A stretch of DNA of 63,699 nt, the filler included, from Octopus bimaculoides (taxonomy: Eukaryota): assembly GCF_001194135.2 (NCBI RefSeq). It is 5 parts of 4 records of this genome, joined end to end, with 100 filler letters (N's around TTAATTAATTAA, not from the genome) between each part and the next. Parts side by side here need not be neighbours in the genome. Positions count along the whole stretch, not along the records: positions 1 to 25,304 come from NC_068987.1; 4 more parts are not named here. One strand, written 5' to 3'. The notes under the pieces are model-generated. The model worked only from the letters and a program-made list of their open reading frames with translations, was not told the DNA's origin and did no database searches. Both the position numbers and the translations under genes were made by a program. The number at the start of each line of letters is the position of its first letter. Positions within the stretch are counted from its first letter, which is position 1. Shown here one piece after another: positions 471-22,563 of this stretch.

Positions 471-982
471 CTTGGACCTAAACATAAATAAATCCTATGT
501 CAAAGTAACCATATAAACTAAAAGCTCATGTCACAAAACGGCTGCCAGACTACCTCAATAATTATAGTAAAAAAAATTAAATAGTCAAACAAAAAAATCT
601 AGTTTGCTTTAAATTCACACAAAACTGTTTCATACAAGCATACTGTGTAATTCATATACCCATTAGCTATTTATACAAATGTTAATATTTATCTTAACAG
701 AAAATAGCTAGAAAAATTACTACACCACCTGCCACAAATGCAGGTTTCAAAATTGACATAGATATTATAACATAATATGACTTAAGAGACTTTTTGTACT
801 CATCCAAATGTGACACAGAAATTATTTTATAACTGACAAGCAAAAAGTTCTGGCGAATTCCTGGAGCATAAAATAATTCCATAAATGCCAAATACAAAGC
901 ACAAAGTGCATAAACTAAACAGGCAATCATAGCTTCCAGAATCCCATTGAACCTTCTCTCACAGAAAAAAAAACTGTCACAA

Positions 983-2973
983 TGATTCTTTATTTTGGCA
1001 CTACGGCCATAACACAGAGAGGACAGCACAAGGACAGACAAAACACCACAGTGGGGACAAGAAACACGGAACGAACGAATGAAGGATGGATAATAACAAT
1101 GAGGATGAAATGGCTTGCCTGCTCCCCACTCGCAGGCAGCATCATTTAAATNNNNNNNNNNNNNNNNNNNNNNNNNNNNNNNNNNNNNNNNNNNNNNNNN
1201 NNNNNNNNNNNNNNNNNNNNNNNNNNNNNNNNNNNNNNNNNNNNNNNNNNNNNNNNNNNNNNNNNNNNNNNNNNNNNNNNNNNNNNNNNNNNNNNNNNNN
1301 NNNNNNNNNNNNNNNNNNNNNNNNNNNNNNNNNNNNNNNNNNNNNNNNNNNNNNNNNNNNNNNNNNNNNNNNNNNNNNNNNNNNNNNNNNNNNNNNNNNN
1401 NNNNNATAAATGAGTTTTTTTCCATCTTTTTTTACCTTTTTGCATCTGTTTTTACAGTCATTTAAAGTTTTAAAATTTTACTCACCTATTTTTACCATTT
1501 TATGTACGGCAAGAAGTCGTCACATTCTACTACTGGCGGCAAGACGTCGAACTCGACGCGTACTCCCGTTGGGTCTATCTTCTTTCCGAACAGTTCTCGT
1601 AGTTTTTCACATCTCTCGTCGTCAGTAACAATTGCTTTGGTGCTCTCTGGATAGTATTCCGTCGTTAGTTTCACTCTTATCACTGATTTCATTTTTGTGA
1701 TGTTCTTCTCTATCTCTGTACTTTTCGCATATGCTACCATATGCCATTTATGTTTTGTTTCTTTTTTATTTGTTTTTTTCTGTAGTCCCACTTGTTTTTC
1801 CTTGTTGGCTTCCTTTGATGTTGTTGGTATCTTGTGTTGTGCTTCTTTTTCTCCCCTTTCTTTTCTTTAGTGGACTCTTTGGCGGTGAGTCCACGTCTTC
1901 TTTCCTTTTCTTCTTCCTATTCACCACCGTTTACTCCTCCTCCACCTTCTCTGGACACTTCTCACATACTGGGTTTGTCGCTTTGGCATTTTGCTCCTGC
2001 TCCTCACTCTGCTGCTTCTGTTCCCCTACAACTTCGTCGTGTTTCTGGGGACACCTTGCTTTCATGTGTCCCCTTATTCCACAATGGTAACAGGTTGGAA
2101 GTCTTCCCTCCACCACTACCCTCACATCTTCCGGCAGTTTCACCTCCTCTGCTATCTTATGCAAGTCTTGTAAACTGACTTGGATGGCCGCTGCAAGGCC
2201 GTATCCCCAATAGTTTACTTCTTTCGTCCTTGTCAGTTTCAACACCTTCACGTCCTCCTCCATATTATACAGGATGGCTGCCACCAGCCACGCCTCCTCA
2301 ATCTCCGGGGGTACTCTGCCAATACTTATCCTGGCCACACGTTTGCCACAGTAAGTCGGCAGAAGTACCCACTCTGGCGTCCTTAGCTTCTTGTTCACTA
2401 ATGAACCTTACCTCCACTGTGCCGTATTTCCTCCGTCTCGTGTAAAATGTGAGGCTTTTCACCTCCTTTAGGCATTCCTCTATAGCCTCCACCATGGCTA
2501 TTTCTATTTTTTCAATGTCGTGGACAGCGTTCTATACATCACTGTCGTTTCATCACGCTTGCTGTTAAATTTTCTGACAGTGTCAGCTTTAGACTAGTTC
2601 CATCCTTCTGTATGAGTCTGTTGAACTCCTTCAACTTCTTCTGGTCCATCTTTATCTCTCGTACCTGCAACACGTCAGCTGTCAAACTATTTCCACTGGC
2701 TGAAGCATAGCTGCCGGCTGGAACTGGTTCGCTCTCCATTCTTCCTTTTTTCTCTACTTCATCCATAAATAGGGAAGAAAACAAAATATAATTTCTCAGG
2801 CAAAAAAATAGCAACTTATTAATTCAACAATGAGGTTCAACAATTAGGTTCACCCTTACGGGAGACCTTCAACAATTAACAATGTGACTTACGTCTAACA
2901 GGGATCAATAATGATTAACGCGAAAAATCCCCCCAAAAAACGAACTCTCAACCACTGCTAGTAAGACGAACTG
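983..2973 (-). mobile_element. Unit A: ORF1(gag)-only non-LTR-like element, Tx1/L1-type ORF1
   Basis: Decayed ORF 2766->1492, then 3' hairpin (1108-1147) and AATAAA (989-994). Bounded by the 14-bp direct repeat AAAAACTGTCACAA (969-982, 2974-2987). An N gap (1152-1406) lies in the 3' UTR. Confidence 0.7.
1492..2766 (-). pseudogene. Gag/ORF1-like protein of unit A (frameshifts, one internal stop)
   Basis: Joined ORF-track pieces: MDEVEKK..GSYAS.., FYTRRRKYGTVEVRF, LLPTYCGKRVARISIGRVP, VVVEGRLPT-CYHCGIRGHMKARC (CX2CX4HX4C), a K/E-rich linker, then KWHMVAYAKS..LPPVV. Confidence 0.75.
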
Positions 2974-2987
2974 AAAAACTGTCACAA

Positions 2988-4310
2988 AAAACTGGGTACA
3001 ATTATCTCTGCTTATAAAGGTTTGGTAAGGTCTAGCCAATTTGTTTAAAGTGTCACAGTTTGGCTATTAACACCTAGCTTCTCCCATTTTGACAATGGAC
3101 TTCATCCTGACCTCCTTACATTGCAGTATGAAAAACTGATTACCTGTTTAACTTAACATTATACTTTATAATTTCCTAACAGTCTGCATGTCTGTGTGTT
3201 TATGAGTCTGTGGTTCTGAGTGTTTATGTGCTTGCAAGTCTTTGTTTTTGCTTGGTAATGAATTCTTATCTGTAGCATTTTTCACTGGTGATCCTACTGG
3301 CGAACTTTTCCTGCTTATCGTTGTAGGTTGGTTTACTTCTTCCTTGGCTTTGTATTTTTTCTGTTCCCTTATCGTCAGTGATATCCTCCTCTCTCTTTTT
3401 CTTGATTTTACTACCACAAAATCACTTTCTTGTTCTGTTATCAGATTCTGCTGTTTTTCCACCATTATATTCTCCTGAATTCTCCCCTCTGCGATTTCCA
3501 TTACTGCTCTAGGGCAACTCTTTCTTAAGTGGTCCCCCCGCTTTCGCCACATTCGTGATACTTTGGGAGCCTCCCCATCAACATTATCTCCAGCTTTTCT
3601 TCATTTGGTCGCTATAAAGTTTCAGGTATTCCGTCATAATACTTTTGACTTACTGTACAAATTACCTCTATTCTGTAACCCCCCCCACACTTCACTTGTT
3701 GGCTGTTTATCATGCCCATCTTCCACTCTTCGCCGTTTCTCTCCTTATCTCCGAAAAAAAAAATCAATGCTATTATCCACTCTGGTTCTATGCACAGTGG
3801 GATTCTTCCCACCCTAATTCTAACAATTCGTTTATCCAAACAGTTTGGCGGCAATGTTCATTTCTCTCCCAGTATCATCCTCTTGGAGGATTTTTCCGCC
3901 TCCTCCTCTGATACAACGGTTACCACTATAGACGCATATCTCTTTCCTCTCGTAAAGAACGCTATGCTGTCTCCTATGTGTCTTTCCAAAATTTCTTCTA
4001 TTTCTTTCTGTGGCGTGTTTTCAATTCTGTTTTTATTTGAAGATGTTCTGAATATTACCGTCTTCTTTTCCATTTTCCCTTTTTCCTTCTCTGGCAGGGT
4101 CAGTTTTATACTTGATCCCTCCTTCTTTACCATATTACTATATTTCGCTATCAGCTCTCTGTTGCACTGCAACATCTGTTTCAGCACACTCGGGTCAACG
4201 GGTACTCGACCTCCCGTAGCTTCGGCATAGCTTCCCATTCTTCACAATTATTCACTACCACCAAACAATGGTGGTTTCGCAACACACAAAAACACAACCG
4301 TTCACACCAA
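2988..4310 (-). mobile_element. Unit B: divergent ORF1-only relative
   Basis: Decayed ORF 4238->3166: MGSYAEATG.., FFTRGKRYASIVV, RIVRIRVGRIP, MLMGRLPK-YHECGESG/DHLRKSC (degenerate knuckle). The shared C-terminal domain and 3' hairpin were not found. Confidence 0.6.
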
Positions 4311-6057
4311 AAATGACGATGAAATGGCTGCATTAGGCCCCACTCTCAAGCAGTACCATTTAACAGTTAAATTATACAAATTAACAAATCTTTCTTACAC
4401 TCTTTTTTCTCTTTTAGCATCGTTTTTTAAAAAAAATTTGAAAGTCTATTTTTCCTTCTTTAAAAAAAAAAAAATTTACTTACTTTACTCTTTTTAACAG
4501 TTCATTAAGGATTTCAAATTTTCATACACCACGACCAATGGTAATTCGTCGAATTCAATTTCGACCCCTAAAGGGTCTATACTACTTCCGAACAGTTCTC
4601 TCAGTTTCTCGTATCTCTCCTTGTTAATGATTATTTCCTTGGTATGTTCTGTATATTTCTCCGGTGGTAACCTTATTCTTACGATCGATTTGAACTTCGT
4701 GATCTTTCGCTCGATTGCCATACTTTTGGCGTATGTAACCATATGCCATTTGTTTTCCATTTAACATCCGTTTGCTTCATCGACGGACCTGGGCTATCCG
4801 AGCAAGTCTTTCCACTTGGCTCCTCCCTTGGTGCACCGAAATAAACGTCAATGTTTGAGCTCTCCACGTCATGTTGCAATGATGTTTCTGCTTCCACTCT
4901 ACCTTCTATTGGTGATTCTGCTGGTGTCTCGAACCACTTCCTTTTCTCCTCCATCCTGTCCTGGCTCTCTAATAGAGAGCTTACCCGCTCTTTCCTTTTT
5001 CTCCTATTCATGACAGTGAATGATTCCCCCACTCTATTTTTCTCTCCTTCCGGCACTACCACTTCGGTGCTCTGTTTTTCACTTTTCTACTCTTCCTCTT
5101 CGTTTTCTTTCTGGGGCACCTTGCTTTCAAGTGCTCCTTTTGGCCACATAAGAAATATGTTGGTGGTCTTCCTTCCACTACCACTCTTAGTCTGACATCT
5201 TCTGGGAGAATGATCTCCTCTGTGATCTCGTACTGGTCGTTAAGGCTCACTTGTATAGCCATCTCGATGCCATACCCCCAACAATTAATCTTTTTGGTTC
5301 TCGTAATCTTCAAGATTTTCACTTCATCTTCCATTCTGTGCATGACTACTTCCACCAACCATGCTGCCTTAATCTCGGTGGGTACTCTGCCAATTCTTAC
5401 TCTGGCGACGCGCTTGCCACAGTAAGTCGGCAGAAGTACCCATTCCGGTGTCCTTATCGGCACAAAGGAGTGGTTTATTGCGTCTTCTTCGTTGCTAAAC
5501 CTTTTTCCCACTGTACCGTATTTCCTTCCACGCGTATAAAATGTGGTAAGCTTCTTTACCTTCTCGAGGCACTCCTCTATTGCCTCTATTGGGGCAACCT
5601 CTATTGCCTCTATTGGGGCAACCTCTATCTTTTTTAGAGGACGTGGATAACGTTCTGTACACCACTGTCCTTTTCGCCACATTTTTAGTCAATTCTTCCG
5701 GTTGAGTCGGCCTCAAACTGGCTCCTTCTCTTTCTATTAAATTTACTGCCCTCCTTCCACTATATGGGCTCTATCTTAATTTCTTTTACTTCCAGGGCAT
5801 TGGTAGATACTCCTCATGCGTAACTTCCAGTTGGTTCATTTTCCATCTCTCCTCTCTTCTCCACCTCACCCATAATTGGGGAAGAAAACAAATATGAAAA
5901 CAGTGAAAAACAGCAACAATAGTTCAAAATTCAACAAATTAAACAGATCCTAAGTTCACCCACACGGGGAGACCTTCGACAAGCATACAACAACAGACGA
6001 CTTCAGAATCACAAGTGATCTAACCCAAAATACCACCAACGCGAAAAAACAGGTCGG
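4311..6057 (-). mobile_element. Unit C: ORF1-only element, closest to unit A
   Basis: Decayed ORF 5873->4494 with LLPTYCGKRVARVRIGRVP, VVVEGRPPT-YFLCGQKEHLKARC and MENKWHMVTYAKS..LPLVV. In-frame 24-bp duplication (IEVAPIEA x2). 5' leader shares TTTTTCGCGTT and GAAGGTCTCCC..GGGTGAAC with unit A. 3' hairpin at 4322-4361. Confidence 0.7.
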
Positions 6058-7815
6058 TGTTTCTTTATTTGCTTATTCAAGCGTACATAAAGTGGACGAA
6101 CAAGGACAGACAAGACAGCACAAGTGGGGACAAATAACATAAAATAATGAATGATATGATAATTACACAATGAAGCTACTACTCGACCCCACTTCCAAGA
6201 AGTACCATTTAAATCTATTTTGTTAACTTGTTAACTAAATTATTTCGGCTCAGTATACAGTGGATTTAATTTTTCAAAGTCTACCACAGGTGGCAGAGGT
6301 CCAAAGTAGTTTATTTCTGTTCTCAATGGGTTTATCGCCTCTCCGAAGCTTGCTTTCAATTTTTTGTAACACTTTCTATCAATAAACATACATTTCCTAC
6401 CTGGAACTTGAACTGTCTCTTCTCTAACTCTGACAACTTTGTTAATTTTGTTAATTTTTTCTTCAATCGCAGGATTTGTCCAATATGTTATAAATCCTGT
6501 TGATATTTTGTATTGTTTTTCTTGCGGGTCTATCTGTGTAATCAGTTGATGTATTTATACCGTTTGAGTTCGAGTTTTTTCATGTATGTGAAGTGCCTGT
6601 GATTTCCTGTGGGTGTTCTGTTATTGGGGTTACTGTTCTGTATGTACCTGTATGTATGCGTTTGTTTGGGGATTGAGGCCTGTTTAGTGTCATTGTATTT
6701 GTTAGTTGCTGTGTAGGCATTTGTGTATCACTGTGTTCTTTCCTTCTCTTTTTCTTAGAGTTCTTTGGGGGTGAGTAGTTCTTTGTTACCTTTTTCTTTC
6801 TATTTTGTATTTCATACACTTCATTTAGACTTGATTCTTCCATGTCTTCCTCCGGCTTCTCACTGCTACTGATTTCTTCCTTTCTCACTTCTGATGGTGC
6901 TTGTTTTTGGAGGAGGGGACAGCTCACCTTAATGTGCCCATTCTCCCCGCAGTGGGAGGGTCTCCCCCTCCACTACTACCCGCAGTCTTACATCCGCCGG
7001 GAGTTCAACCTCCTCTGTTATCTTTTGAAGGTCCCTGATGGTGGCCTGGATTATGACCTCGAGGCCCTAACCCCATCAATTTAATTGTTCTGTGCGGCTC
7101 ACTTGTAGAACCTGCGGGTCATCCTCCATGTTCATCATAATGGCTGCCAGCAACCACATTTCTTTAATTTCCGGGGGGAAGCCCTGCCAATTCTTATTCT
7201 TGTTACTCTCTTCCCAAGATAAGTTGGTAGCAGTGCCTACTTCGACTTCAAGGCTTCCGTGGAGGTCATTACTGCTTCTTCCATTGACGAGAAGTGCACT
7301 TCCACCGTTCCAAATTTCCTGCCTCCACAAAAAAAAAATCGATTTTATCGCTCAACTTATTCAAGCATTCTTCAACATCTCCTGCCGTTTCTATCTTCTT
7401 AGTTAGCAGTGACAGAGTTCTGTACACCACTGTCATTAGTTCCTTGTTTGTTGTCACATCCACTGGTGGCGTCAGTTTTAACTTTGCGCCCTCTCTCCTA
7501 AATAAATCCAGGCTGTTCTCCACTGCCTCCAAATTCACAGTCACTTCTGTTACTTCCAGCTTTCTTACAAACTCCGCAACACTTTCACATTTCGCTACTG
7601 CTGCGTAGCTGCCAGCACGCGCTTGCTTTATCTCCGTTGTAGCTTTTTCCTCACTAGGAGAGAAAAACCACAAAACAAAAGGAAACAATCCTTAAATTCA
7701 AAACCATCAGCAGGCACCCCGCTAGGGGGGAACCCCTAACACAGATTAACCATCCGCAACACAAAAATTTTACAAAACACCAGCCGAACGCACTTCAACA
7801 AAAACAACCCGGTGA
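6058..7815 (-). mobile_element. Unit D: ORF1-only element, 5' end abuts an N gap
   Basis: Decayed ORF ~7688->6240: AGSYAAVAK, TVVYRTLS, VRLRVVVEG/RPSHCGENGHIKVSC. Hand-translated C-terminus YWTNPAIEEKINKINKVVRVR..KLKASFGEAINP..LPPVVDFEK. 3' hairpin 6169-6209 and AATAAA 6064-6069. Confidence 0.7.
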
Positions 7816-8503
7816 NNNNNNNNNNNNNNNNNNNNNNNNNNNNNNNNNNNNNNNNNNNNNNNNNNNNNNNNNNNNNNNNNNNNNNNNNNNNNNNNNNNNN
7901 NNNNNNNNNNNNNNNNNNNNNNNNNNNNNNNNNNNNNNNNNNNNNNNNNNNNNNNNNNNNNNNNNNNNNNNNNNNNNNNNNNNNNNNNNNNNNNNNNNNN
8001 NNNNNNNNNNNNNNNNNNNNNNNNNNNNNNNNNNNNNNNNNNNNNNNNNNNNNNNNNNNNNNNNNNNNNNNNNNNNNNNNNNNNNNNNNNNNNNNNNNNN
8101 NNNNNNNNNNNNNNNNNNNNNNNNNNNNNNNNNNNNNNNNNNNNNNNNNNNNNNNNNNNNNNNNNNNNNNNNNNNNNNNNNNNNNNNNNNNNNNNNNNNN
8201 NNNNGTGGAAAGCTAAGAATTTTTCTGCAGCTAAGTTTTCTATTTTGTCAATGACTTACAAAGCCTATAATTAAGGACTTCTTTGCGGCTGAGGCCTTAG
8301 CAGTTTTTCACGCGAAAAACCTGACGGCTGTATCATCCCAACAACTTTTTGGCAGTTCTCATCATGTTTCACGAGACGTTACTTCATTCTTACATAGCAT
8401 CATCTACTTGCTGAAAATAGCAGTAAAATGCGCGGTTACACTTCTAGTAAGTACGTAACATTTCTTGATGCCTTCCTATTCTCACATTTCGAAATTTCCC
8501 CAA

Positions 8504-8549
8504 GACACCTGATGAAGGCTGGAGAGTATATCAGCCGAAATGTTGTATT
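8504..8549 (+). ncRNA. Minimal type-I hammerhead ribozyme motif (slightly degenerate)
   Basis: GACAC-CTGATGA-A-GGCTG..CAGCC-GAAA-TG-TT-GTATT. About 80 bp are near-identical to 56807-56879. Confidence 0.55.
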
Positions 8550-8599
8550 AACAACAAACAAAATGCCCAGTTCAGCATATTTCGTCATGTCTCCATTTC

Positions 8600-8950
8600 T
8601 CTCGGCCTGAGAATGAAGGAACTCTGACTTGTCTTCTATTGCACGGCACCTTTCGGTAACTCTTGTTCACGGCTCCGACTTCATTTTCCGGTTACCTTGC
8701 TTGATAGTGTCTTTCAGCAATAACACTCAACAGTACCTCTCTTCGACTAGACGCCCTGTTTCGACCGCCGCATCTGCTTCTGCAATCTTCGAACTGCATT
8801 CCATCTTTTGGCACCCTTTTCAATGAACACTTGTCTTCTACTGTGCCATTTTGGATTCCGGCATCTTCTTATCATGACGCTTGTAGAGTTATTCTTTGCT
8901 ATTTACCACGTTATTCACTAACATCTTAAAGTGGACTCTCTGTACACAAT
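8600..8950 (-). mobile_element. Decayed LINE ORF2 fragment (RTE-like inter-domain region)
   Basis: Hand translation RNPKWHSRRQVFIEKGAKRWNAVRRLQKQMRRSKQGV resembles the APE-RT linker of RTE/L2-type ORF2. Confidence 0.3.
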
Positions 8951-10224
8951 GAACTTTTTGCGTGTTTGTACGTTTGAAAGACTGGCTTTACATGTTTTTC
9001 GCATGTTTTCACTTTTCAGGACCCCCTTTTCACATTGTTCCTATTTTTGATTAAATATTTTGTTCACACATCTTTGACTGTCAAATATTTTTTGCTCAAC
9101 GTTCATACATGCATACACACATACATGTTTTCAGCCTCGTGCTATCCACTCTGACATATCAATACTGAGCGTTGAATTTTGCATTTGGTCCTGAAATGTT
9201 TATTTTGCTTTCCTTTTCTTCTGCTTCAGCAGATTTTGGACAATTATTTTTTCACTTGTTTTCAACTGTTTGTACACCTTTTTGTACCTTGGTACATTCA
9301 GCTACCTGTTATTTTTCTTCTGTTTTCTCTTTTACTACCGGCCTCTTTATGCGTATCGCACATTTGTCTACGACAAATGTTCTCGCAGGGGCGTAACTGT
9401 AACAGAAGTGATTTACACTGTCATTATGTGAGATGTTTTCGTTGCGAGTTGTTTAGGCTTAAATACCTGGATATCGGCTTCACATGCCTTTTCGTTCCAG
9501 CAGGTCACGTGACCTGGTGGTTAGCCGAACTTCTTGTTCGCATTGGTCAGTTTCCAGCCACCCAATCGCGTTGGCGCAACAGTTCGTTTTTCCTTAATCG
9601 GGAAATTAATCGCCAGCCCTGGGAGCCTCCTGATCTCTATAAGAACTGCAGTTCTCGAGTGCGCTATGCCTTTGGCACACGCCACTGACTACATGCAACT
9701 CTTCTCTGACAATGATGTATCTGACACCAGCCAGTCTCCACTTTCATCTCCACCAGACGCCTGCCTACATCGTTGCTGTATGACCACCACGCAACCAACA
9801 GACTAACGGCTGCCTCTACACACCACCAAACAGTGCGTCAACTTTGTCTACAACATCGATAGTCCAGCCTGGCCACGAAGTCTCTCACAACCTTGTTGTA
9901 ACCTGTTATATTAATTTATTTCATGTATGGCAATCATTGTATTTTATATCAGAAAATAAATCGTCGCTAACCAATTCATTTTCATCTCACGTATATCATT
10001 TTCACATTGCTCTTATTTACCATCTTTGTTATAACTCCTTCAAGAGTCATGTTAGGGTACCACCTCTGCGAGTTGCAGAATTACTTATTCACTTTTCACT
10101 GGGGTTAACATTCAGGTTGACCATCGGTGTCCAGAAAATAGGTACCAGTAATTTACTGTTTGAATAAATTTACGCTTTATTAAAATTTCTCGGTGTTGTG
10201 TCGTTATTTCGAACAGAAGTGGTC

Positions 10225-10400
10225 GTTCGACCTGCTAGAAATACGAGCTAAATCTCCCTTAAAGCACACCTTACTGTCTTTAAAAGGGATTTGTTGAATA
10301 AAGTGGTCTTGGATTTCTGGCATAATGGGCCGGCCACGGTTGGGATGTCTTTGATGTCTTTGATCGTAGGTCTGCTCGCTTTGCGTTGATAAACACAATA
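10225..10400 (+). repeat. Dispersed repeat family (CTGCTAGAAATAGCAGCYAAATCTCCC)
   Basis: The same motif recurs near 12315, 35205, 36225, 52130, 54730 and 61430 on both strands. Confidence 0.6.
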
Positions 10401-10524
10401 GCAACAATAACCCTTACTATCTATCATATTAAAGTAAATTCTATCATATTACGGTAAATTCCTGTGGGGTAAACAATCTGTCACGCTATGAAAATGGGAT
10501 GGTTAAGGTATGAAGTGCGAGAGA

Positions 10525-10555
<31 letters not shown>

Positions 10556-10671
10556 GGGGAGTGGGAGGGAGAGAGATTTAAATGAACGGTATCAACACGT
10601 GCATACATACACCCATATACGAATGCTATTGGCGCGCAGGCATACACCCTGACGGCAATTAGTTGTGTGTA

Positions 10672-10705
<34 letters not shown>

Positions 10706-10750
10706 GGGGGAGAGAAAGAGGGAGAGAGAGAGAGAGAAAGAGGGAGAGAG
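10525..10750. repeat. (GA)n and (GT)n microsatellites
   Basis: Direct inspection. Confidence 0.9.
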
Positions 10751-11142
10751 AAAAGAACTAAAAGAGGACTTTTTAGAAAAATATCGTTTATCTTCAGCTA
10801 GCAAATGCGTGAAATATTCCATTTCAGTAGTTTTAGTCATTTGCTAAATTTATTCGATTGAAAGATCGCTTTTGGGTGGGTAGGATCCCTGTTCATCATT
10901 GGTAAATTTTGCACGGTAGAAATTGAACTCTGTTCTGCAAGCTAAGGAACCATCAACCAGCTATTTACAATGGTCACCATCCTAATATGTCCTATCTAAC
11001 CTTTTTAAAAGCGTGATGCATGACAAGTAATTATTTTATCGATCTCGGAATATTGAAGATTCGAATTCGATTCTAACCAGATTTAGACTTTAAACGTTAA
11101 GAGTTGTAACTAAGTAGCGGGGAGTGGGATATAGTAGGTCAG

Positions 11143-12203
11143 TAGGGTATAGTGGGCATTTGCCAGATTTTCATAATTTTCTCCCTACTCCAAACCAGGG
11201 ACTATGATGAAGCAGCCATTATGAATTGCATTATCCCTCCTACTCCTATAAATGTTATATTCTTCCTGGGGATTCCATTTCAAGTTCCTCATTCTGGACC
11301 AGAGCACTCAGTCACTAGACCAGCCAATATTTGATCGTCAAACAAAACTTCGCGGTGCTGTAAAAATTACTGCAGATTTGGATTTTTGTGCTGGAGGTAT
11401 GTTCAGAGTATCTTCTTTGCCTATGTTATGTTGGATAAAGGAAATATTCTTGAAAATTCAGAAATTCAAGGAAATTCAAAAACGGGGCATAATAAGTCAC
11501 TTGGCAGTTGGCGAAATGGAACATAACGGGTCACTTAAGATATAGCACACAGACGTCTATAAATATAAGAAAAGAATTAAAGAAGTCTTCCACACCCTAC
11601 AAATAGGTGCCAGTATCTGAAGGTATATTAGCAGCATCGTTTCATGTAACTACTAGTATTTACACAGAATCAAGAACTAGGTAGTAGAGCGTGTGGTAGC
11701 CAAAGTAAAAACAAAATCTAGGAGTGGAAAGACAGGAGAATAACTTGCTCCAAAATGGCAGAAAACAGAGTCTGACAATAGTGATGGTGACCATGACAGT
11801 GCAGATGATTCGGAGGAAAAGGAGACTGAGAGTTCCCTCTGCAAGAGATTCTGGAGCAGATACAAAGGCAAGAACAACGAAGTTTGGTCACTGTGTGACC
11901 TTTTTGATGGTTATGTTCTCCTTAGATTTATTCCAAAGGGAACAGATGTTACTCATGTTTTTCACATGTTTCTTTGTTGATTGCATTCAATGTTCACCCA
12001 AATTTGTGGAAGTAGTTTAACTATAATGATGTCTATATGAAGCAAGCATTCAAAATTGCTTCCTAATCCATCGGAGGTACTTATTAGAATCATGACGCAA
12101 TTTTTGAGATTGTAAATCCATGTTTAACTGTTACATTTTGGTTTTTATTTGACATTGTTTCCAAAATTTTTGGAAAATTGACCCATTACACCTCACCGTA
12201 CCC
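11143..12203 (+). mobile_element. Degenerate pogo/Tigger-like DNA transposon remnant
   Basis: Imperfect terminal inverted motifs GGGTATAGTG / CACCGTACCC. Acidic tract followed by a decayed PHD-like Cys pattern (SLCKRFWSRYKGKNNEVWSLCDL) near 11740-11990. Confidence 0.35.
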
Positions 12204-12826
12204 AATAAAACATGTACTCTGATGCTCTGCCGTTTCTGACTTTAAGATAGTCTTTCAGAATTTCCAGAACATTGTAAAATGAATCATCACAAGATCTCGA
12301 GCATGGTTGCTCAGTCTGCTAGAAATATCAGCTAATTCCCCTTCACATCACACATTACTGCTTCAAAATGGAATTACATTGAATATCATAGTTTTAGACA
12401 CACCGTGTCTGAAAAAGGAAACAAGAGACGATAACATTTGGTGTGTCCATCCGTCTACTGGACCATGGATGACCTGGCGGTAAATAACAACCACAACAAC
12501 AATAAAACAAAATGGAAATCGATTTGTCAAAAACTAAACTTTATTTATCACAAGACAAACTAGAAAAGAATGAAATGGTAGGAGGAGAGGTGATTGGGGA
12601 ATCAGACAAGTACGACATAAAGGTCTTTGTTATTCAACATTAAAAATAAAAATAAACGAGTATATTTATCTTTTTTGTGTAAGTCACAGTTTGTCGCTGA
12701 GGTTTGTCGCTAAGACAAGGGTCACGGTTGAAAATAAAGGGTTATTTCAAATCGATCGTAGTGATTTGTTTTGATTCCACGTTTGTACACATTCGATGAT
12801 TTATATATATATATAAAGGGACTCAC

Positions 12827-13096
12827 CAAACAACAGTTAGGGATATATAAATGCTTGAAAAACGATGGGTTGGTGATGGATGAGGACTGAGGTTGAAATA
12901 ACAACAATAACGTATCCCATTCTCTGATATCAGACTGGGGCTGAGAAAGAAAAGGAGTGAGAGGAAGAGGGGGAATTGGGTTCTTTGATGGACATATAGT
13001 TAAGATGAAGGTCTGCTTGTCTCTGTCTTGTTCATAAGATGCAACCATAACACTTTAAGTACTCTTAAAACGATGCTTTTCTTTCCCTGCTGCAGT

Positions 13097-13134
<38 letters not shown>

Positions 13135-13618
13135 TAAATGAGGGTAATACTAGAGGTTGTAAAAATAGAGTAGAAGTAGAAGGGTAATAGTAGCTGTGGG
13201 TTTGATAGCTGTGTTGGTAATAGTGGTTGTAGTAACAGCAATGGTGGTAGTAGTTGGAAATGTAGTACTTGGAGTGTAAGTATTTAAAGTAGTAGTAGTA
13301 GTGGTGGTGGTGGTGGTGGTGGTGGTGGTGATAGCGGTGTGGTGGTGGTGGTAGGTTGTATTGGTTAGAAATATCAATGATTACGAAACCAGCTCTTGAA
13401 AATATTTGCACGATAAATTTGTTTAACCAACAATTCCAAGTTGTTAAAATAATTTTACGGTCTCTTTAACCTCATCTTTGAAGGTGAAACACTTTTTGTA
13501 ATACAGTTTCACAATGTTTCGATCGATTTCGCCTCGGATCGTTATTCCTGGATGTGTACACAGTAACAAACAAGGATCGGAACTAGAAACTTAAATTTCT
13601 TAACTAAAGTGTGTACAC
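12827..13618 (-). other. Candidate host exon (mostly low-complexity UTR-like)
   Basis: Acceptor TTTTTCCTGCAG (ends 13619), donor GTGAGT (12826-12821), CpG-rich 5' part. An ATG at 13048 is open to the donor. No recognisable protein. Confidence 0.25.
13098..13352. repeat. (TAG)n and (GGT)n trinucleotide tracts
   Basis: Direct inspection. They explain the poly-His/Thr/Leu ORFs in the track. Confidence 0.9.
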
Positions 13619-14204
13619 CTGCAGGAAAAAGATACTTAATAACGACCGATGATCAAACCGATAGAAAAGTAACCTACGTGTAAAAAATTGAAAAATCTAC
13701 CTTCACTAAAAACATGAATTTAATACTCCAAAAAATTATAATTGTATTAGCAACTTGTCTGCAACGAATAAACATTAAATTTAATGTGTTTTAAAAAAAT
13801 ATTTAGTTATAAAGAACAAACACAAATATATTGCGTAAAATATATTTTCACAATATTTTACTGATCTTTTTTGCTGCTTGTGAAAATAATTCATCTTAAA
13901 TTTTTTGTCAACGAGAATAAATAGTGAATAAAATAAATAAAATGGGAAGCGAAAAACAAAATAAAATAATAGCCATTATAACAACAAACATGAAATGAGA
14001 GGGAAAGGAAGGAGACAGAGAAACAGGCGAGAGGAGGAAGAGCGAGAGGAAGGGAGAAGAAAGAGAGAGTTAATGAGTGAGAGGAAAAGAGAGAAAGACG
14101 GAGAGGCATTAATATAGTCTGGATGTTGAGACAATAATGTGACATCATTGTTAATGTCAGTTGAATAGTCTCTCTCTTTCCCTCCTCCCCTCTCTCTCCG
14201 TATA

Positions 14205-14449
14205 TATATTCTTTCATTCTTTTACTTGTTTCAGTCATTTTGACTGCAGCCACGCTGCAGCACTTCCTTTAGTCGAACAAATCGACCCCAGGACTTATTC
14301 TTTGTAAGGCTAGTATTTATTCTATCGGTGTCTGTTACTGAATTGCTAAGTTACGGGGACGTAAACACACAAGCATCGGTTGTCAAGCGATGGTGTTGGT
14401 GGTTGGGGGGACAAACACAGACACACAAATATATATATATATATATATA
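14205..14449 (-). mobile_element. CORE-like SINE, 3' half
   Basis: Reverse complement matches the 3' half of 57050-57510 (gtttgtcccccc..gtaacttagc..gaataagtcctggggtcgattt..aatgactgaaac). Confidence 0.7.
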
Positions 14450-14689
14450 NNNNNNNNNNNNNNNNNNNNNNNNNNNNNNNNNNNNNNNNNNNNNNNNNNN
14501 NNNNNNNNNNNNNNNNNNNNNNNNNNNNNNNNNNNNNNNNNNNNNNNNNNNNNNNNNNNNNNNNNNNNNNNNNNNNNNNNNNNNNNNNNNNNNNNNNNNN
14601 NNNNNNNNNNNNNNNNNNNNNNNNNNNNNNNNNNNNNNNNNNNNNNNNNNNNNNNNNNNNNNTATGTAGTTCTACAAATATATATAGTT

Positions 14690-16520
14690 TTATATGTAGT
14701 TACATATATAGGGAGAATTCACGAAAGAAAAACAAAAAAACAAAAGACGAAGGCAGGTGGTGTAGACAACAAACAGATGTATTAGTTTAACGCTCGGGAA
14801 GTGAAAAGTCTTTAACGTTTCGAGCCTACGCTCTTCCGCAGAAAGGAACACAGAAAGAAACAAGGAGAGAAAATAAAGAATGTGTAGTAGCTAGCGATCT
14901 ATCAGGTCGAATGCCGGACAGAGGGGTCACACAGGAGAGCTAGGAAGAAGGGGAAATAATAAAGTAGTGGTGATTCCAAAACGAAGGTGCGTGTGCATGT
15001 GCATAAGAGAGTATGTATGTGCGTGTGGAAGAGGGCTGGTGACCTTGACGTGTGCGTGTGTGTATGTGTAGGTGTGTGGATGTGGGGTTGGGAATGGCCA
15101 GTGCTAGTGTGTGCGTGGTGCTGTGATGTGATGTGGTGTAGTGTTGTGTGGTATGGTGGTGTATGGTGTAGTGGTGTGTGGTGTGATGGTGTTGGGAGGT
15201 GGGGAGGCGAGAGTGGGAAAANNNNNNNNNNNNNNNNNNNNNNNNNNNNNNNNNNNNNNNNNNNNNNNNNNNNNNNNNNNNNNNNNNNNNNNNNNNNNNN
15301 NNNNNNNNNNNNNNNNNNNNNNNNNNNNNNNNNNNNNNNNNNNNNNNNNNNNNNNNNNNNNGGGGTATAGGTGGGGTATGTGGGTAGGAGTGAAAAGAAG
15401 AAGTAGGAGTCGGAGCAAGAGAGGAGAGGTGGGTAGGAGGAAGTAGGTGTGAGAGGGAGAGAAGAGAGGGGAGGAGAGAGCAGGAAATGCAGTAGATGAC
15501 ATTGGTAGAAGTTCAGGTGAAGGAGTCGGTGATGTGATAGGGTCGATGATGGGTGCCGGTGAGGAGGGTGGTGTCGGAGAGGTAGGGTGGTGGGGTGGTA
15601 GGTGAGGGGAGACGGGAGACGGCGGGGCGTGTGCGGAGGGAGAGAACAGATGCACGATCCATGGAACGTGCTCTGGTAAGGGCGGTGTGGATAGTGGTGA
15701 GGGAATATCCACGTAGGATGAAGTGGTGAGCCATGAGTTGAGACTGAGTCTCAAAGTCATGGTCGTCACTACAGAACCTGCGTAGACGGAGGAATTGGGA
15801 ATAGGGGATGGAAAGTTTGGTGTGTTTAGGGTGGGAGGAGAAGTTGAGGTATGAGTGTGAGTCTGTGTGTTTGTAGTGGATGGAGGTGGTGAAAGTGGAG
15901 TGATGAATGCTGACCGAAATGTCAAGAAAGGAGACAGAGATAGTGCAGGAGAAGTGGAGGGCAGGATGGAAAGATTTGACGGAAGAGAGGAAGGAGTCTA
16001 GATGTTCGCTGAAGTGTCTAGATGTTCGCGGGAGAGGTCGCACCGATACAGTCGTCAATACAACGGCCAGAGTGTGACCAGTAAAACTTGAAAATATTNN
16101 NNNNNNNNNNNNNNNNNNNNNNNNNNNNNNNNNNNNNNNNNNNNNNNNNNNNNNNNNNNNNNNNNNNNNNNNNNNNNNNNNNNNNNNNNNNNNNNNNNAC
16201 AATTACGAATACAAACAAGAAGATAATAACAACAGGTGTCTTTCGACAGAGAACGAATCCAATTGAATTGGCGTGTAGGATGTGAAAGCCTAAAAGCAGG
16301 AACATGGGAGATGGACATAAGAGGTGTTGGCGGTCGGCAGTCAAGCCAAGAAAGAGAGATCATGGCTGGCCGGACACCAGTCACGTGCAAGGAAGAGAGA
16401 TGGGTAGGGGGCAGCGGGATTGAAGGATTAGAAAAGATCAGAGACAAAGAGAAAGGTACAGGGGAGATAACTGAGTGGGAAACAGTGGGAGTTAAAGAAA
16501 AAGAGGGCCAAGAAATGTGA
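14690..16520 (-). mobile_element. Penelope-like element remnant (RT C-terminus, GIY-YIG start, hammerhead-bearing 3' repeat)
   Basis: RCIDD (RT active-site-like), FLDISVS..HTDSHSYLNFSSHP..IPYSQFLRLRRFCS (typical PLE RT thumb), TSSNVIYCISC (GIY-YIG start). Hammerhead-like motif at 14810-14845. Confidence 0.8.
14810..14845 (-). ncRNA. Minimal hammerhead motif with core mutation (A6->C)
   Basis: Minus strand CTTT-CTGCGGA-A-GAGC-gtag-GCTC-GAAA-CG-TT-AAAG: stems I and II intact, palindromic AACGTT stem III. Confidence 0.55.
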
Positions 16521-16788
16521 GAGAGAGAAGGGGAGCGAGAAAAAGAAAAAAAGCAAGAATGTATGAAGGGAACTAAAAGATAGAATGAGAGTCGTACAAA
16601 ATGTAGACACATACCTACCATAAGGTGAACACAAGTGTTTACGTACGCCGCTATATGTATATATAAATATATAAATGGAACAAAAATGCAATAGAGGACA
16701 ATAAAACATTCGGACAGATAGACGATACAAAGGCGGACAAGAGAAACATCAATAAGAAGGACAGGCAAAAAAAGACGGATCAAATGGA

Positions 16789-16848
<60 letters not shown>

Positions 16849-17272
16849 TCTATTTATACATATGCATGTATATATATGTTGTTATATATGTATGTATNNN
16901 NNNNNNNNNNNNNNNNNNNNNNNNNNNNNNNNNNNNNNNNNNNNNNNNNNNNNNNNNNNNNNNNNNNNNNNNNNNNNNNNNNNNNNNNNNNNNNNNNNNN
17001 NNNNNNNNNNNNNNNNNNNNNNNNNNNNNNNNNNNNNNNNNNNNNNNNNNNNNNNNNNNNNNNNNNNNNNNNNNNNNNNNNNNNNNNNNNNNNNNNNNNN
17101 NNNNNNNNNNNNNNNNNNNNNNNNNNNNNNNNNNNNNNNNNNNNNNNNNNNNNNNNNNNNNNNNNNNNNNNNNNNNNNNNNNNNNNNNNNNNNNNNNNNN
17201 NNNNNNNNNNNNNNNNNNNNNNNNNNNNNNNNNNNNNNNNNNNNNNNNNNNNNNNNNNNNNNNNNNNNNNNN

Positions 17273-17306
<34 letters not shown>

Positions 17307-17521
17307 CAAATGATATATGAGCATATGCATGTATACATACATATATGTACATACCTACATTTACATGTATATATAGATGCATATCCGGGTACAGGACGTC
17401 AGAAAAATGAACGGGAACATAAAGCACGAAAACGGACTTTGTTTACAGACAACAGAACGAACACAGGAAAACAGACAAGCCACTTATGGAATTATTCCTT
17501 CATTAGCTGCCTCTATTCTAA

Positions 17522-17579
17522 ACTAGACGTTTCGAAGATGAGGCAGAACGCGCTCTTAGAATAGCTCTTCCTGAGTAGT
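17522..17579 (-). ncRNA. Degenerate hammerhead-like motif in a PLE-like repeat
   Basis: Minus strand ACTA-CTCAGGA..TCTTC-GAAAC-GTC-TAGT: G5->C in the core, 4-bp stem I, GUC site. Confidence 0.35.
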
Positions 17580-18431
17580 GGATTAACCCACTAAACAGAG
17601 GATTCCAAGGTAGCAAACACAAACCAAGACTTTTTTATTATTATTTATACACCCTGTTACCCTTAAAGAAAGATCAACCCACCAGTTAATATTTCTAGTT
17701 TAGTCATTTATACAACGTCCTGTAGTGTTACACTGCAAAATAGTATGATTTAAATATATTAAACCTTCATTCTTCTTCTTGAGCTCTTCCACTCTTCTTT
17801 TCTTTTATGTATTTTCCTTCACCCTGATGAAGCTCCATGTTCTAGATCGGATGTGTTACAAAATATGACGAATATTATTCTCAGAATTTTCAATGGCAAC
17901 ACTGTAGGACATTGGAAGAAGAAACGGCTGTTAGATGGGATAAAGTTTTGTATTTAAAAAATAATATTCGATGTTAGTCAATTGTTGTTGATCTAGATTT
18001 CTCCATTTCCTGATTAATTTAAATTTGATTCCTGATAAACTCATGTTTATCTTTATCATTGCCTGTATCCTATAAGCTTAATATGCTTGCATATGTATGA
18101 CCAGGGTTAACATAGATAATTATACCGGTAGTAAAACGGATATTTTTATTCCTTAGACGGTTATTCCAACCTCTACCTCTACTAACCTATATAATATATA
18201 TGTGCTTGTATGTGTGTGTCTATATGTCCTTGTCTATGTGTTTGTCCTTTACCACTGCTAGACAATCGTTGTCGATGTGTTTACATTCCTGTAACTTAGC
18301 AGTCCGGGAAAGAGACCAATAGAATAAGTACTAGGTTTGAAAAAGTTCTGAGGTCGATTCGTTCAATTAAGATTCTTCAAGGCGTTGCGACAGCATTGCA
18401 GCAGTCTAATGACTGAAACAATTAAATGATA

Positions 18432-18469
<38 letters not shown>

Positions 18470-21167: not shown

Positions 21168-21355
21168 ACACACACACACACACACACACACATACACACA
21201 CACACACAAACACACACACATATACGACGGGCTTCTTTCAGTTTCCTTCTCCCAAATCCACTTTGATCGGTCCGAGGCTATAGTAGAAGACACCTGCCCA
21301 AGGTGCCACGCAGTGGGACTGAACCCGGAATGATGTAGTTGGGAAGCAAGCTTCT
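21168..21355 (-). mobile_element. CORE-like SINE, 5' half with (TG)n
   Basis: Reverse complement of gggttcagtcccactgcgtggcaccttgggcaggtgtcttctactatagcctcgg. Confidence 0.7.
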
Positions 21356-21585
21356 GAGAGAAGGTTTTAAAAAATGGAGAGAAAAAAATAACGCATCTGG
21401 ATTATAAATGTACTTGTTGAAACGACCGGAAAGAAATGATTGGGGAGACATGAGTGCCAAGGGAGACAACTGTAATCTGGCTAACGTGTTTTTGAGCAAT
21501 CGTGTATATGTGGCCACGCATGTTCGTGAGTTTGAAGACTATGTGAACGTGTGCATGTGTATGTATGGGTGTGTGCGTGTATATG

Positions 21586-21617
<32 letters not shown>

Positions 21618-22527: not shown

Positions 22528-22530
<3 letters not shown>
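22215..22530 (-). mobile_element. Penelope-like GIY-YIG endonuclease fragment
   Basis: Hand translation across frameshifts: SNVIYCILCS..LYISQ.GLR*ADRFAEHLRNIR..EQEFIFSLHSSILSGLN. Confidence 0.65.

Positions 22531-22563
<33 letters not shown>

What the first reader, a model, noticed from the sequence alone, without database searches (positions are those of the whole stretch)
983..7815. Head-to-tail array of four diverged gag/ORF1-only retroelements (HeT-A/HAL1-like system candidate)
Seen: four units of about 1.3-2 kb, all on the minus strand and directly abutting. They share an N-terminal GSYA motif, a YRT..FxTRGxxY..RIGRVP core and a single, variably decayed VVVEGRxP-CCHC knuckle. No APE, RT, RNase H, protease or integrase sequence lies between them. 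In A and D, ORF1 is followed by a conserved 3' UTR with AATAAA, so these are not ordinary 5'-truncated LINEs. The units are too diverged to be a recent tandem duplication. Known: this ORF1 type is found in Tx1/L1-clade LINEs, many Tx1 families are target-specific, and Drosophila HeT-A and mammalian HAL1 are ORF1-only elements moved in trans, with HeT-A forming head-to-tail arrays. Inference: a cephalopod family of gag-only non-autonomous retroposons that repeatedly inserts at or next to its own kind. I do not know of a description of it.
Basis: partly seen in the sequence, partly recalled or inferred. Interest (0 to 1): 0.85.

Follow-up and report, generated by a model that had tools for sequence, protein, structure and literature searches.

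The report
Chain of dead ORF1-only octopus LINEs
Four to five decayed copies of an octopus "half-LINE" retrotransposon, which keeps the RNA-binding ORF1 gene but has no reverse transcriptase, sit joined end to end; the family looks undescribed, but the kind of element and its chaining have known precedents.

Summary
Window 974-7815 (minus strand) holds four homologous units in head-to-tail order, and the 3' tip of a fifth sits at the edge of the gap at 7816.

Each unit has a ~190-nt 5'UTR, one ORF and a 3'UTR. The ORF encodes a GSYA N-terminus, tandem RRMs, a CCHC knuckle, a basic linker and a conserved ~85-aa C-terminal domain. The 3'UTR has a conserved hairpin and ends at AATAAA.

All four units are pseudogenes, yet they diverged under purifying selection (dN/dS about 0.1-0.3). 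U3 and U4, and weakly U2, have closer relatives elsewhere in the genome than next door, so local duplication of a dead copy is excluded.

The family is found in octopods (three Octopus species and Argonauta). It has hundreds of diverged fragments, 5'-truncated copies and intact 380-450-aa ORFs. Eight outside copies lack ORF2. Autonomous LINEs (APE, RT, zf-RVT) in the same genomes carry a homologous ORF1 and a similar 3' end.

A second head-to-tail junction in the same register exists at another O. bimaculoides locus. Most outside copies have no second copy of the family next to them. The HAL1-like reading is supported. The HeT-A-like self-targeting reading is not established: there are no telomere repeats and no oligo(A) at junctions. 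Serial template jumping is an equally good or better explanation for the chain.

The parts
7805..7815 (-). Probable 3' tip of a further unit (U0), cut off by the assembly gap at 7816-8204
   Evidence: TCACCGGGTTG followed by a T-run matches the U1/U2 junction ACACCGACCTG + T-run. This is similarity over only about 16 nt.
6050..7804 (-). Features: 5'UTR 7804 to about 7653; decayed ORF about 7652-6240; GSYA 7616-7596; RRM cores 7329-7291 and 7233-7180; VVVEG 6985-6962; knuckle remnant 6954-6916; C-terminal domain 6500-6243; 3'UTR 6239-6050 with hairpin about 6212-6170 and AATAAA 6069-6064.
   Evidence: Six frame changes or stops.
4300..6049 (-). Unit U2. Features: 5'UTR 6049-5874; ATG 5873; decayed ORF to the stop at 4494; GSYA 5831-5817; RRM cores 5541-5497 and 5436-5380; knuckle 5184-5113 with first Cys changed to Tyr; C-terminal domain 4751-4497; 3'UTR 4493 to about 4300 with hairpin about 4365-4320. 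The distal 3'UTR is missing.
   Evidence: The longest intact stretch is the 208-aa ORF at 5682-5056.
2992..4299 (-). Unit U3, of a different subfamily (P0005/P0008/P0051-like). Features: shortened 5'UTR; ATG 4238; RRM cores 3959-3915 and 3842-3798; knuckle 3587-3511 with a frameshift; basic linker; C-terminal domain remnant about 3105-3040; deletion reaching to the 3' tip about 3015-2992.
   Evidence: It is 79% nt identical over 1 kb to a copy in O. vulgaris (L006 10001-10931) whose flanks differ.
974..2991 (-). Features: 5'UTR 2991-2767; ATG 2766; decayed ORF to the stop at 1492; GSYA 2718-2698; RRM cores 2447-2403 and 2365-2309; intact CCHC knuckle 2119-2048; C-terminal domain 1749-1495; 3'UTR 1491-974 holding the assembly gap 1405-1152; hairpin about 1149-1105; AATAAA 994-989.
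   Evidence: (Pfam zf-CCHC E 3.7e-4).
965..973 (-). T-run directly after U4's 3' end. It is the same feature that starts the next unit at the other junctions. No further family sequence follows it.
   Evidence: No homology downstream to the 5'UTR blocks or to repeat X.

Best explanation
The region is a head-to-tail chain of at least four, probably five, dead copies of an octopod family of ORF1-only non-autonomous non-LTR retrotransposons (a 'half-LINE', working like mammalian HAL1).

**What a copy looked like when alive.** A live copy was about 2 kb. It had a ~190-nt 5'UTR and one ORF of about 400-460 codons. That ORF encoded a LINE ORF1-type protein: tandem RRMs, one CCHC knuckle, a basic linker and a conserved C-terminal domain of about 85 aa. 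The 3'UTR had an A-rich stretch and a conserved stem-loop, and ended a few to about 25 bases after AATAAA without a poly(A) tail.

**How it moved (inferred).** The element makes its own RNA-binding chaperone. It borrows the endonuclease and reverse transcriptase of related autonomous LINEs (APE, RT, zf-RVT) in the same genomes. Those LINEs have a homologous ORF1, and the last ~100 nt of their 3'UTR resemble this family's.

**How the chain formed.** The units belong to at least three lineages (U3; U4; U2 weakly separate from U4; U1 unplaced) that diverged while the protein was under selection. The chain was therefore built by reverse transcription, not by local duplication. My preferred sub-mechanism is serial template jumping within one target-primed reverse transcription event (about 0.4). 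In it, the RT reaches the 5' end of one RNA and continues on the 3' end of another. Successive insertions at the 5' edge of a resident copy come next (about 0.35). After insertion all units decayed neutrally.
For: **Shown.**
- The units are homologous and in register.
- The ORF1 has a tandem-RRM fold. The AF2 model has pLDDT 70-84 for residues 20-235, and the top Foldseek matches are HuD, Sxl and hnRNP A1 RRM1-2. There is a CCHC knuckle.
- The same protein type sits 0.2-1.3 kb upstream of APE+RT in L001 and L005.
- dN/dS among units is about 0.1-0.3, with third positions near saturation. This holds in the C-terminal domain too.
- The family is large. A profile search gave 1004 hits at E<=1e-3 and 312 at E<=1e-10, mostly 90-300-aa fragments plus intact 380-450-aa ORFs. 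All looked-up members are from O. bimaculoides, O. sinensis, O. vulgaris or Argonauta hians.
- Eight outside copies lack a canonical ORF2. They share the same 3'UTR blocks in L002, L003, L004, L007 and L009.
- 5'-truncated copies exist (L002, L007A).
- One copy lies inside an intron of a Wtap-domain gene.
- Region-matched identity: U4-P0017 74% against U4-U2 49%. U3-P0134 70% and U3-P0051 53% against about 30% to its neighbours. U2-P0007 50% against U2-U4 41%.
- The 3'UTR stem-loop has 13 pairs, 9 with compensatory changes. 81% of cells are paired against 69% in shuffles (0/500), and slid controls give 24-55%.
- The 3' ends align with those of the autonomous LINEs.
- The junction recurs in L007.

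**Evidence for template jumping.**
- Every downstream unit keeps its 5' end. Truncation is seen only in the most upstream member (L007A, and L002 ahead of repeat X).
- No target-site duplication is recognisable between units.
- The density of disabling lesions is the same in all four units (p 0.94).
- The two copies of repeat X flanking one element in L009 are 92.5% alike, against about 75% between loci.
- R2 proteins make longer products by template jumping in vitro, and the same study saw head-to-tail tandem transgene junctions in cells (PMC11371274).
Against: - Trans-mobilisation is inferred. The similarity between the 3' ends of the ORF1-only copies and the autonomous LINEs is modest (z 4.9; 57% column identity), and no partner with a near-identical 3' end was found.
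- No clear target-site duplications were found for any copy, so TPRT itself is inferred from 5' truncations and dispersal.
- U1 has no closer relative outside the array among the 150 proteins examined.
- A single event would need several old lineages to be active at once.
- The lesion test has little power.
- The sample of outside loci is small (eight) and was chosen through annotated gene models.
- One outside copy (L006 10001-10931) is followed directly by an RT fragment. An ORF2-bearing relative of the U3 lineage is therefore not excluded.
Confidence: 0.62

Rival explanations
1. The family, or its partner's endonuclease, targets its own kind. The chain then grew by successive independent insertions at the 5' edge of a resident copy (double or multiple insertion, HeT-A-like array building).
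For: - Units come from different lineages.
- A second junction in the same register exists at another locus.
- Every unit starts with a T-run that could be a preferred nick site.
- Three copies from different lineages end exactly at the same point of repeat X (L002, L004, L009). This looks like site preference.
- Tandem non-LTR dimers made by double insertion are common in Drosophila (PMC5932611).
Against: - The 5' start of repeat X has no T-run, so one sequence preference cannot explain both E-E and E-X junctions.
- There is no conserved target-site duplication at junctions.
- Upstream units are not less decayed than downstream ones.
- In Drosophila most such tandems are tail-to-internal, whereas here the downstream 5' ends are complete (two junctions carry later deletions).
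- There are no telomere repeats and no oligo(A) at junctions.
- Seven of the eight outside copies have no second copy of the family beside them.
Confidence: 0.3
2. Local tandem duplication (unequal crossing-over) of one inserted copy, or of a dead gene, followed by neutral decay.
For: The units are in register and directly abutting, and junction sequences resemble each other.
Against: - Third codon positions differ two to three times more than first and second positions; dN/dS is 0.1-0.3.
- U3 and U4, and weakly U2, have closer relatives elsewhere in the same genome.
- U3 belongs to a separate clade, 28-30% aa identical to its neighbours.
Confidence: 0.05
3. A tandem cluster of a domesticated host gene derived from LINE ORF1 (ZCCHC3-like) that later died.
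For: Past purifying selection on the protein. An AATAAA signal followed by a U-rich stretch resembles a genomic polyadenylation site.
Against: - All four copies are broken.
- There are hundreds of diverged fragments on many chromosomes.
- 5'-truncated copies exist, as do copies in introns and in chimeric gene models.
- The UTR blocks remain 70-82% identical although dS is saturated, as expected for cis-acting retroelement sequences.
- The homologous ORF1 sits in autonomous LINEs.
Confidence: 0.03

Closest known systems
HAL1 (half-L1) of mammals
   Same: A non-autonomous LINE derivative that keeps ORF1 and the UTRs and has lost ORF2, so it depends on an autonomous relative (PMC5753468). Here the same layout is seen in twelve copies, counting the four in the window. 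The ORF shows past purifying selection.
   Different: This family derives from a different LINE group. Its ORF1 is of the tandem-RRM + CCHC type with an extra C-terminal domain, not the coiled-coil/RRM/CTD type of mammalian L1. There is no poly(A) tail, it is found in octopods, and it tends to sit end to end with other retroposons.
HeT-A of Drosophila telomeres
   Same: Gag-only, needs RT in trans, and is found in head-to-tail arrays.
   Different: Here there are no telomere repeats in the window, no oligo(A) at junctions, a non-Jockey ORF1 type and many interstitial copies with no second copy of the family beside them. Promoter activity of the 3' end was not tested.
Tandem non-LTR dimers by double insertion (Drosophila; McGurk and Barbash 2018) and template-jump concatemers of R2 reverse transcriptase
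   Same: Head-to-tail joining of non-LTR elements made by the retrotransposition machinery itself (PMC5932611; PMC11371274).
   Different: Here the chain has four to five members from different old lineages. The downstream 5' ends are complete, and no target-site duplicate is visible at the junctions.
L1/Tx1-group LINEs with type I ORF1p (RRM + CCHC)
   Same: The same ORF1 architecture. The autonomous relatives in L005 and L006 have APE, RT and zf-RVT. The distant ORF1 homologue P0003 lies upstream of APE+RT.
   Different: The window's units have no ORF2. The clade of the partner's RT was not determined. The conserved C-terminal domain has no Pfam match.

Membership tests
ORF1-only non-autonomous LINE derivative (HAL1-like) | ORF homologous to ORF1 of autonomous LINEs of the same genomes | tested here: met
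   P0013's ORF1 (about 30% identical to the units, with the same C-terminal motif) is followed by APE and RT in L005. A second full LINE lies at L006 63966-68190.
ORF1-only non-autonomous LINE derivative (HAL1-like) | No ORF2 between ORF1 and the 3'UTR, as a trait of the family and not of single copies | tested here: met
   There are no APE/RT hits in the window. ORF1 runs straight into the shared 3'UTR in U1, U2, U4 and in L002, L003, L004, L007A, L009. The exception is L006a, which is followed by an RT fragment.
ORF1-only non-autonomous LINE derivative (HAL1-like) | 3' end shared with the autonomous partner | tested here: inconclusive
   The last ~100 nt align at 57% column identity with conserved blocks. 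The local alignment of U4 against L005 gives z 4.9; U1 against L005 gives z 1.1.
ORF1-only non-autonomous LINE derivative (HAL1-like) | Signs of retrotransposition: dispersed copies, 5' truncation, target-site duplications | tested here: inconclusive
   Dispersed copies on many chromosomes and 5'-truncated copies (L002, L007A) were found. Candidate duplications did not stand up as significant.
HAL1 proper (derived from mammalian L1) | Descent from the L1 clade with type II ORF1p | tested here: not met
   The ORF1 has tandem RRMs plus CCHC and the host is an octopus. It works like HAL1 but is not a member.
HeT-A-like telomeric array | Telomeric setting | tested here: not met
   No TTAGGG dimers with up to one mismatch in the window. 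The chromosomal position of the window is unknown.
HeT-A-like telomeric array | Oligo(A) between successive elements | tested here: not met
   The junctions read AATAAAGAA, then 11-15 nt, then a T-run.
HeT-A-like telomeric array | Promoter in the 3' end of the upstream element driving the next one | not testable with these tools
   The idea that solo copies carry a 3'-end tag at their 5' end was checked and not supported (z<2).
Type I LINE ORF1p | RRM fold(s) followed by a CCHC zinc knuckle | tested here: met
   AF2 with Foldseek gives tandem RRM proteins at probability about 1.0. Pfam zf-CCHC scores 20.9 bits against a cut-off of 20.8 in U4. The knuckle is decayed in U1, U2 and U3.
Tx1-clade target-specific LINE system | Insertion at one specific target sequence | tested here: inconclusive
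   Three copies end at the same position of repeat X. The window's junctions and L007 have no X, and L008's 3' end is lost in an assembly gap. RT phylogeny was not done.
Tandem duplication / satellite | Neighbours are each other's closest relatives and diverge neutrally | tested here: not met

The most novel reading that the evidence does not exclude
The chain, together with the X-E-X arrangements at other loci, may be a natural record of a LINE reverse transcriptase joining several RNAs end to end in vivo. The joined RNAs would be ORF1-only elements of different lineages and an unrelated ~290-nt repeat. The joining would happen by serial template jumping, or by a targeting rule aimed at the 5' edge of resident retroposons. 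Chain-building would then be a regular property of this octopod LINE system rather than an accident.
Probability: 0.35. Interest if true: 0.7.

Novelty: new member of a known kind. Interest (0 to 1): 0.5.

Why it matters
ORF1-only 'half-LINEs' are well documented only in mammals. An independent origin in cephalopods, from a LINE group with a different ORF1 type, shows that keeping the chaperone gene while discarding the polymerase is a recurrent strategy.

It also gives octopus genome annotators an explanation for hundreds of 'CCHC-type domain-containing' and 'uncharacterized' gene models, some of them fused to host genes.

The ORF1 carries a conserved C-terminal domain of unknown fold, shared with the autonomous relatives. 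The 3'UTR carries a covarying stem-loop. Both are candidates for the contacts that let the element borrow a partner's reverse transcriptase.

If the end-to-end joining proves to be a regular outcome, the family would offer natural examples for studying template jumping or 5'-edge targeting by a LINE enzyme.

Tried and rejected
1. **Termini at the A-rich tail.** I considered placing the element's termini between the A-rich tail and the block TTAAATGG. I rejected this because the copy in L002 carries the blocks after the A-rich stretch as its own 3'UTR.
2. **Target-site duplications around single units.** The candidates were U4 TTGTGACAG, U1 CACCG..TG, L007A and L009 AGCTAGC... The U4 motif also ends the L002 copy, so it is probably the conserved 3' tip. 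The L009 motif lies inside its longer 5'UTR. None reached significance.
3. **A pseudo-LTR or 'promoting in tandem' tag.** This would be 3'-end sequence at the 5' end of the L008 and L009 copies. It was not supported (z 1.6, 0.0 and 0.8).
4. **Repeat X as a 5'UTR of the family.** No similarity was found (z<1.5).
5. **Programmed frameshift.** The C-terminal domain lies in the +1 frame relative to the knuckle in U1, U2 and U4. Intact relatives have one continuous ORF, and the shifts arise at different places, so this is probably coincidence.
6. **Word-indexed protein searches.** These returned only three proteins each. The exhaustive profile search was needed.
7. **Unavailable loci.** P0001, P0002 and the window's own 208-aa ORF are not on record for context look-up. 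The window's locus could therefore not be fetched from the chromosome-level assembly.
8. **Other negative results.** Rfam gave no hits in the window, L007 or L009. Pfam gave no match for the C-terminal domain.

Full report
**Observation**

The minus strand of window 974-7815 holds four units that are homologous over nearly their whole length.
- Self-blastn finds 64-70% nucleotide identity at constant offsets.
- MAFFT aligns the units from the region upstream of the start codon to the AATAAA at the end.
- tblastn with the conceptual U4 protein hits the others at E 7.5e-66 (U2), 7.5e-40 (U1) and 5e-21 (U3), and nothing else in the piece.

The units are U1 7804-6050, U2 6049 to about 4300, U3 about 4299-2992 and U4 2991-974. 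Every unit is broken, with three to six frame changes or stops each. One deletion spans the U2/U3 junction and another removes the distal ORF and most of the 3'UTR of U3.

**The two gaps**

The gap at 1152-1405 lies in the A-rich, non-coding part of U4's 3'UTR, so reading frame is not at stake. The sequence before it aligns with the A-rich 3'UTR of U2. The sequence after it begins with the block ATTTAAATG.., which follows that A-rich stretch in U1, U2, L007, L009 and L002. The two sides are thus collinear with five other copies. By comparison with U2 only about 20 nt need be missing. A hidden insertion cannot be ruled out: in L002 a SINE sits exactly there.

At the other end, the last 11 bases before the gap at 7816 plus the following T-run match the U1/U2 junction. 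A fifth unit's 3' tip therefore probably lies there. Beyond that gap no family sequence is found.

**Anatomy of a unit**

A unit has the following parts.
- A 5'UTR of about 190 nt that starts with a T-run.
- One ORF.
- A 3'UTR made of an A-rich stretch, a conserved stem-loop, a T/C-rich stretch and AATAAA. The next unit's T-run follows 11-15 nt after AATAAAGAA. There is no poly(A).

The ORF encodes the following.
- An N-terminus with GSYA.
- Two RRM-like domains. The AlphaFold model of the intact relative P0005 has pLDDT 70-84 for residues 20-235, and its best PDB matches are tandem-RRM proteins such as HuD, Sxl and hnRNP A1.
- The VVVEGRxP-CCHC knuckle. Pfam zf-CCHC just passes its cut-off in U4.
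- A lysine-rich linker.
- A conserved C-terminal domain of about 85 aa.

Between U2 and U4 it differs at codon positions 1/2/3 by 0.29/0.21/0.61. In intact relatives it lies in one ORF with the knuckle (P0005 404 aa, P0011, P0001). It is also present in the ORF1 of autonomous relatives (P0013, P0030, P0044). It has no Pfam match, and the model there is of low confidence.

The 3'UTR stem-loop has 13 pairs, nine with compensatory changes across seven copies. 81% of cells are paired against 69% in shuffles (0 of 500 reach the observed value), and slid controls give 24-55%.

**What the family is**

The exhaustive profile search found 1004 proteins at E<=1e-3 and 312 at E<=1e-10. Most are fragments of 90-300 aa, with a few intact ORFs of 380-450 aa. 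Some host gene models have swallowed a fragment: P0014, P0050 with an RGS-like context, and P0076 with LDL-receptor-like repeats. All twenty members I looked up that carry a name come from Octopus bimaculoides, O. sinensis, O. vulgaris or Argonauta hians.

I fetched eight outside loci.
- **L005 (O. sinensis)** holds an autonomous LINE. Its ORF1 is 615 aa and about 30% identical to the units, with the same C-terminal motif. About 200 nt downstream comes an ORF2 with Exo_endo_phos, RVT_1 and zf-RVT.
- **L006** holds another such LINE.
- **L001** shows the distant homologue P0003 lying 1.3 kb upstream of APE+RT.
- **L002, L003, L004, L007, L008, L009** hold copies of the window's own lineages. 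In these, ORF1 runs straight into the shared 3'UTR wherever that end is readable, and no APE or RT lies in register. L002 and L007A are 5'-truncated. L009 lies in an intron of a Wtap-domain gene.

The last ~100 nt of the ORF1-only copies align with the 3' ends of the two autonomous LINEs at 57% column identity, with shared blocks around TGTTTTGTC, GCC and AATAAAG. The U4-L005 local alignment gives z 4.9 and U1-L005 gives z 1.1, so this link is suggestive rather than firm.

One copy, L006 10001-10931, breaks off in the linker and is followed directly by an RT fragment. No C-terminal domain or 3'UTR follows within 5 kb. I could not tell whether this is a rearrangement or a relic of an ORF2-bearing relative.

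**Not a local duplication, not a host gene**

Between units, third codon positions are near saturation while first and second positions are much less changed. For U2-U4 the core differs by 0.25/0.18/0.51, with dN/dS 0.11; other pairs give 0.2-0.3. The lineages therefore diverged while the protein was functional. The UTR blocks remain 70-82% identical although dS exceeds 2. This suggests that they were constrained too.

Over matched regions the identities are as follows.

| Unit | Closest outside relative | Identity | To neighbouring units |
|---|---|---|---|
| U4 | P0017 (O. bimaculoides) | 74% | 49% to U2 |
| U3 | P0134 | 70% | about 30% |
| U3 | P0051 | 53% | about 30% |
| U2 | P0007 | 50% | 41% to U4 |
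| U1 | none closer in the sample | - | - |

A host-gene reading is contradicted by four points: all copies are dead, the family is large and dispersed, some copies are 5'-truncated, and the ORF1 is homologous to that of autonomous LINEs.

Misassembly by collapse is unlikely. Collapse merges near-identical repeats, whereas these units are only 64-70% identical at the nucleotide level. The same kind of junction is also present in the chromosome-level assembly at L007.

**How the chain arose**

A second head-to-tail junction in the same register occurs at L007. A 5'-truncated copy ends with AATAAAGAAAACGTTGAGCGGCAG and is followed at once by the T-run and 5'UTR of a second copy. The gene model P0002 also spans two consecutive units. 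The copies at the other outside loci (L002, L003, L004, L006, L008, L009) have no second copy of the family beside them.

Several of those copies abut an unrelated repeat of about 290 nt, which I call X, end to end.
- X lies directly upstream of the 5' start in L003 and L009.
- X starts right after the 3' end in L002 (z 22), L004 (z 6) and L009.
- In all three of the latter, the element ends at the same position of X.
- The three elements belong to different lineages.
- In L009 the two X copies are 92.5% alike, against about 75% between loci.

Two mechanisms fit the chain.

1. **Serial template jumping in one target-primed event.** This predicts complete 5' ends for all downstream members, truncation only of the most upstream one, no target duplicates inside the chain, equal ages, and like copies of X on both sides. 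All of these are seen, though the age test is weak (p 0.94). It has biochemical precedent (PMC11371274).
2. **Successive insertion at the 5' edge of a resident copy.** It has precedent in Drosophila double insertions (PMC5932611) and would explain the common end point in X. However, a single sequence preference cannot cover both the T-run start of the elements and the start of X, and no junction duplicate is seen.

I put the first at about 0.4 and the second at about 0.35.

The HeT-A comparison fails on what could be tested. There are no telomere repeats and no oligo(A), and the ORF1 is of a different type. The idea of a 3'-end tag at the 5' end of solo copies was checked and not supported.

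**Comparison and novelty**

In function the family is closest to mammalian HAL1, an ORF1-only derivative dependent on an autonomous relative (PMC5753468). It is not a member of HAL1: the ORF1 type, the tail and the host differ. Head-to-tail joining of non-LTR elements is also known. Four literature searches found no description of such a family in cephalopods; the one detailed octopus LINE study concerns an RTE element with a single ORF. I therefore file it as a new member of a known kind. The chain-forming habit is the part that could prove more unusual.

**Limits**

- Trans-mobilisation, TPRT and the chain mechanism are inferred.
- No target-site duplication was demonstrated.
- The outside sample is small and was reached through annotated gene models.
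- The partner's clade was not determined.
- The window's own locus could not be fetched from a gap-free assembly.

Noticed in passing
L009 8910-9122 and 11117-11325; L003 about 9340-9887 and 11712-11790; L002 about 11730-11940; L004 about 11665-11715: A ~290-nt repeat (X), unrelated to the family, abuts ORF1-only copies end to end. It lies upstream of the 5' start in L003 and L009. In L002, L004 and L009 it starts right after the 3' end, at the same X position each time. The two X copies in L009 are 92.5% alike, against about 75% between loci. X also occurs as inverted pairs. Its nature (SINE-like retroposon, target repeat or long target duplication) is open.
   Followed up: partly
window 15513-16098 (-) and 23080-23360 (-): ORF fragments that look like a Penelope-like element. 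One has motifs I recall from the RT-linker region but no Pfam hit. The other has a GIY-YIG domain (Pfam E 5.5e-4, just under the cut-off).
   Followed up: partly
L006 10933-12194: An RT fragment (RT residues about 226-662) follows a U3-like ORF1 copy directly in the same orientation. No C-terminal domain or 3'UTR of the ORF1-only element follows within 5 kb. This is either a rearrangement or a relic of an ORF2-bearing relative.
   Followed up: partly
L002 about 11108-11500; L006 from about 68571: What looks like the same SINE sits in the A-rich 3'UTR of the L002 copy and directly after the 3' end of the autonomous LINE in L006. It starts GGCGCAGAAGTGGCTGTGTGGTAAGTAGCTTGC in L002 and shares ..CCACATGGTTCCGGGTTCA.. 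with the L006 insert. It was recognised by eye only.
   Followed up: no
window, U1, U2 and U4 (knuckle versus C-terminal domain): In three units the C-terminal domain lies in the +1 frame relative to the knuckle. The shifts arise at different places, and intact relatives have one ORF, so this is probably coincidence rather than programmed frameshifting.
   Followed up: partly
proteins P0014, P0050, P0076, P0121: Host gene models in octopus annotations contain fragments of this family fused to unrelated domains (for example an RGS-like context and LDL-receptor-like repeats). These are likely annotation chimeras or exonised fragments.
   Followed up: no
L003 5' flank about 9640-9790 and 3' flank 11712-11790: This copy has a truncated 3'UTR and is flanked by direct repeats of 55-75 nt or more (91% alike) that are part of repeat X. 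This is unusual for a target-primed insertion.
   Followed up: no
L005 about 15340-15375: The autonomous LINE ends in a (TTA)n microsatellite tail after GGCCAATAAAAAGAATTAA. The ORF1-only copies show no such tail.
   Followed up: no
window 8217-25304: The rest of the piece is rich in assembly gaps and in (TA)n, (CA)n and (TATG)n-like microsatellites. It has no further copy of the family and no evident host gene.
   Followed up: partly
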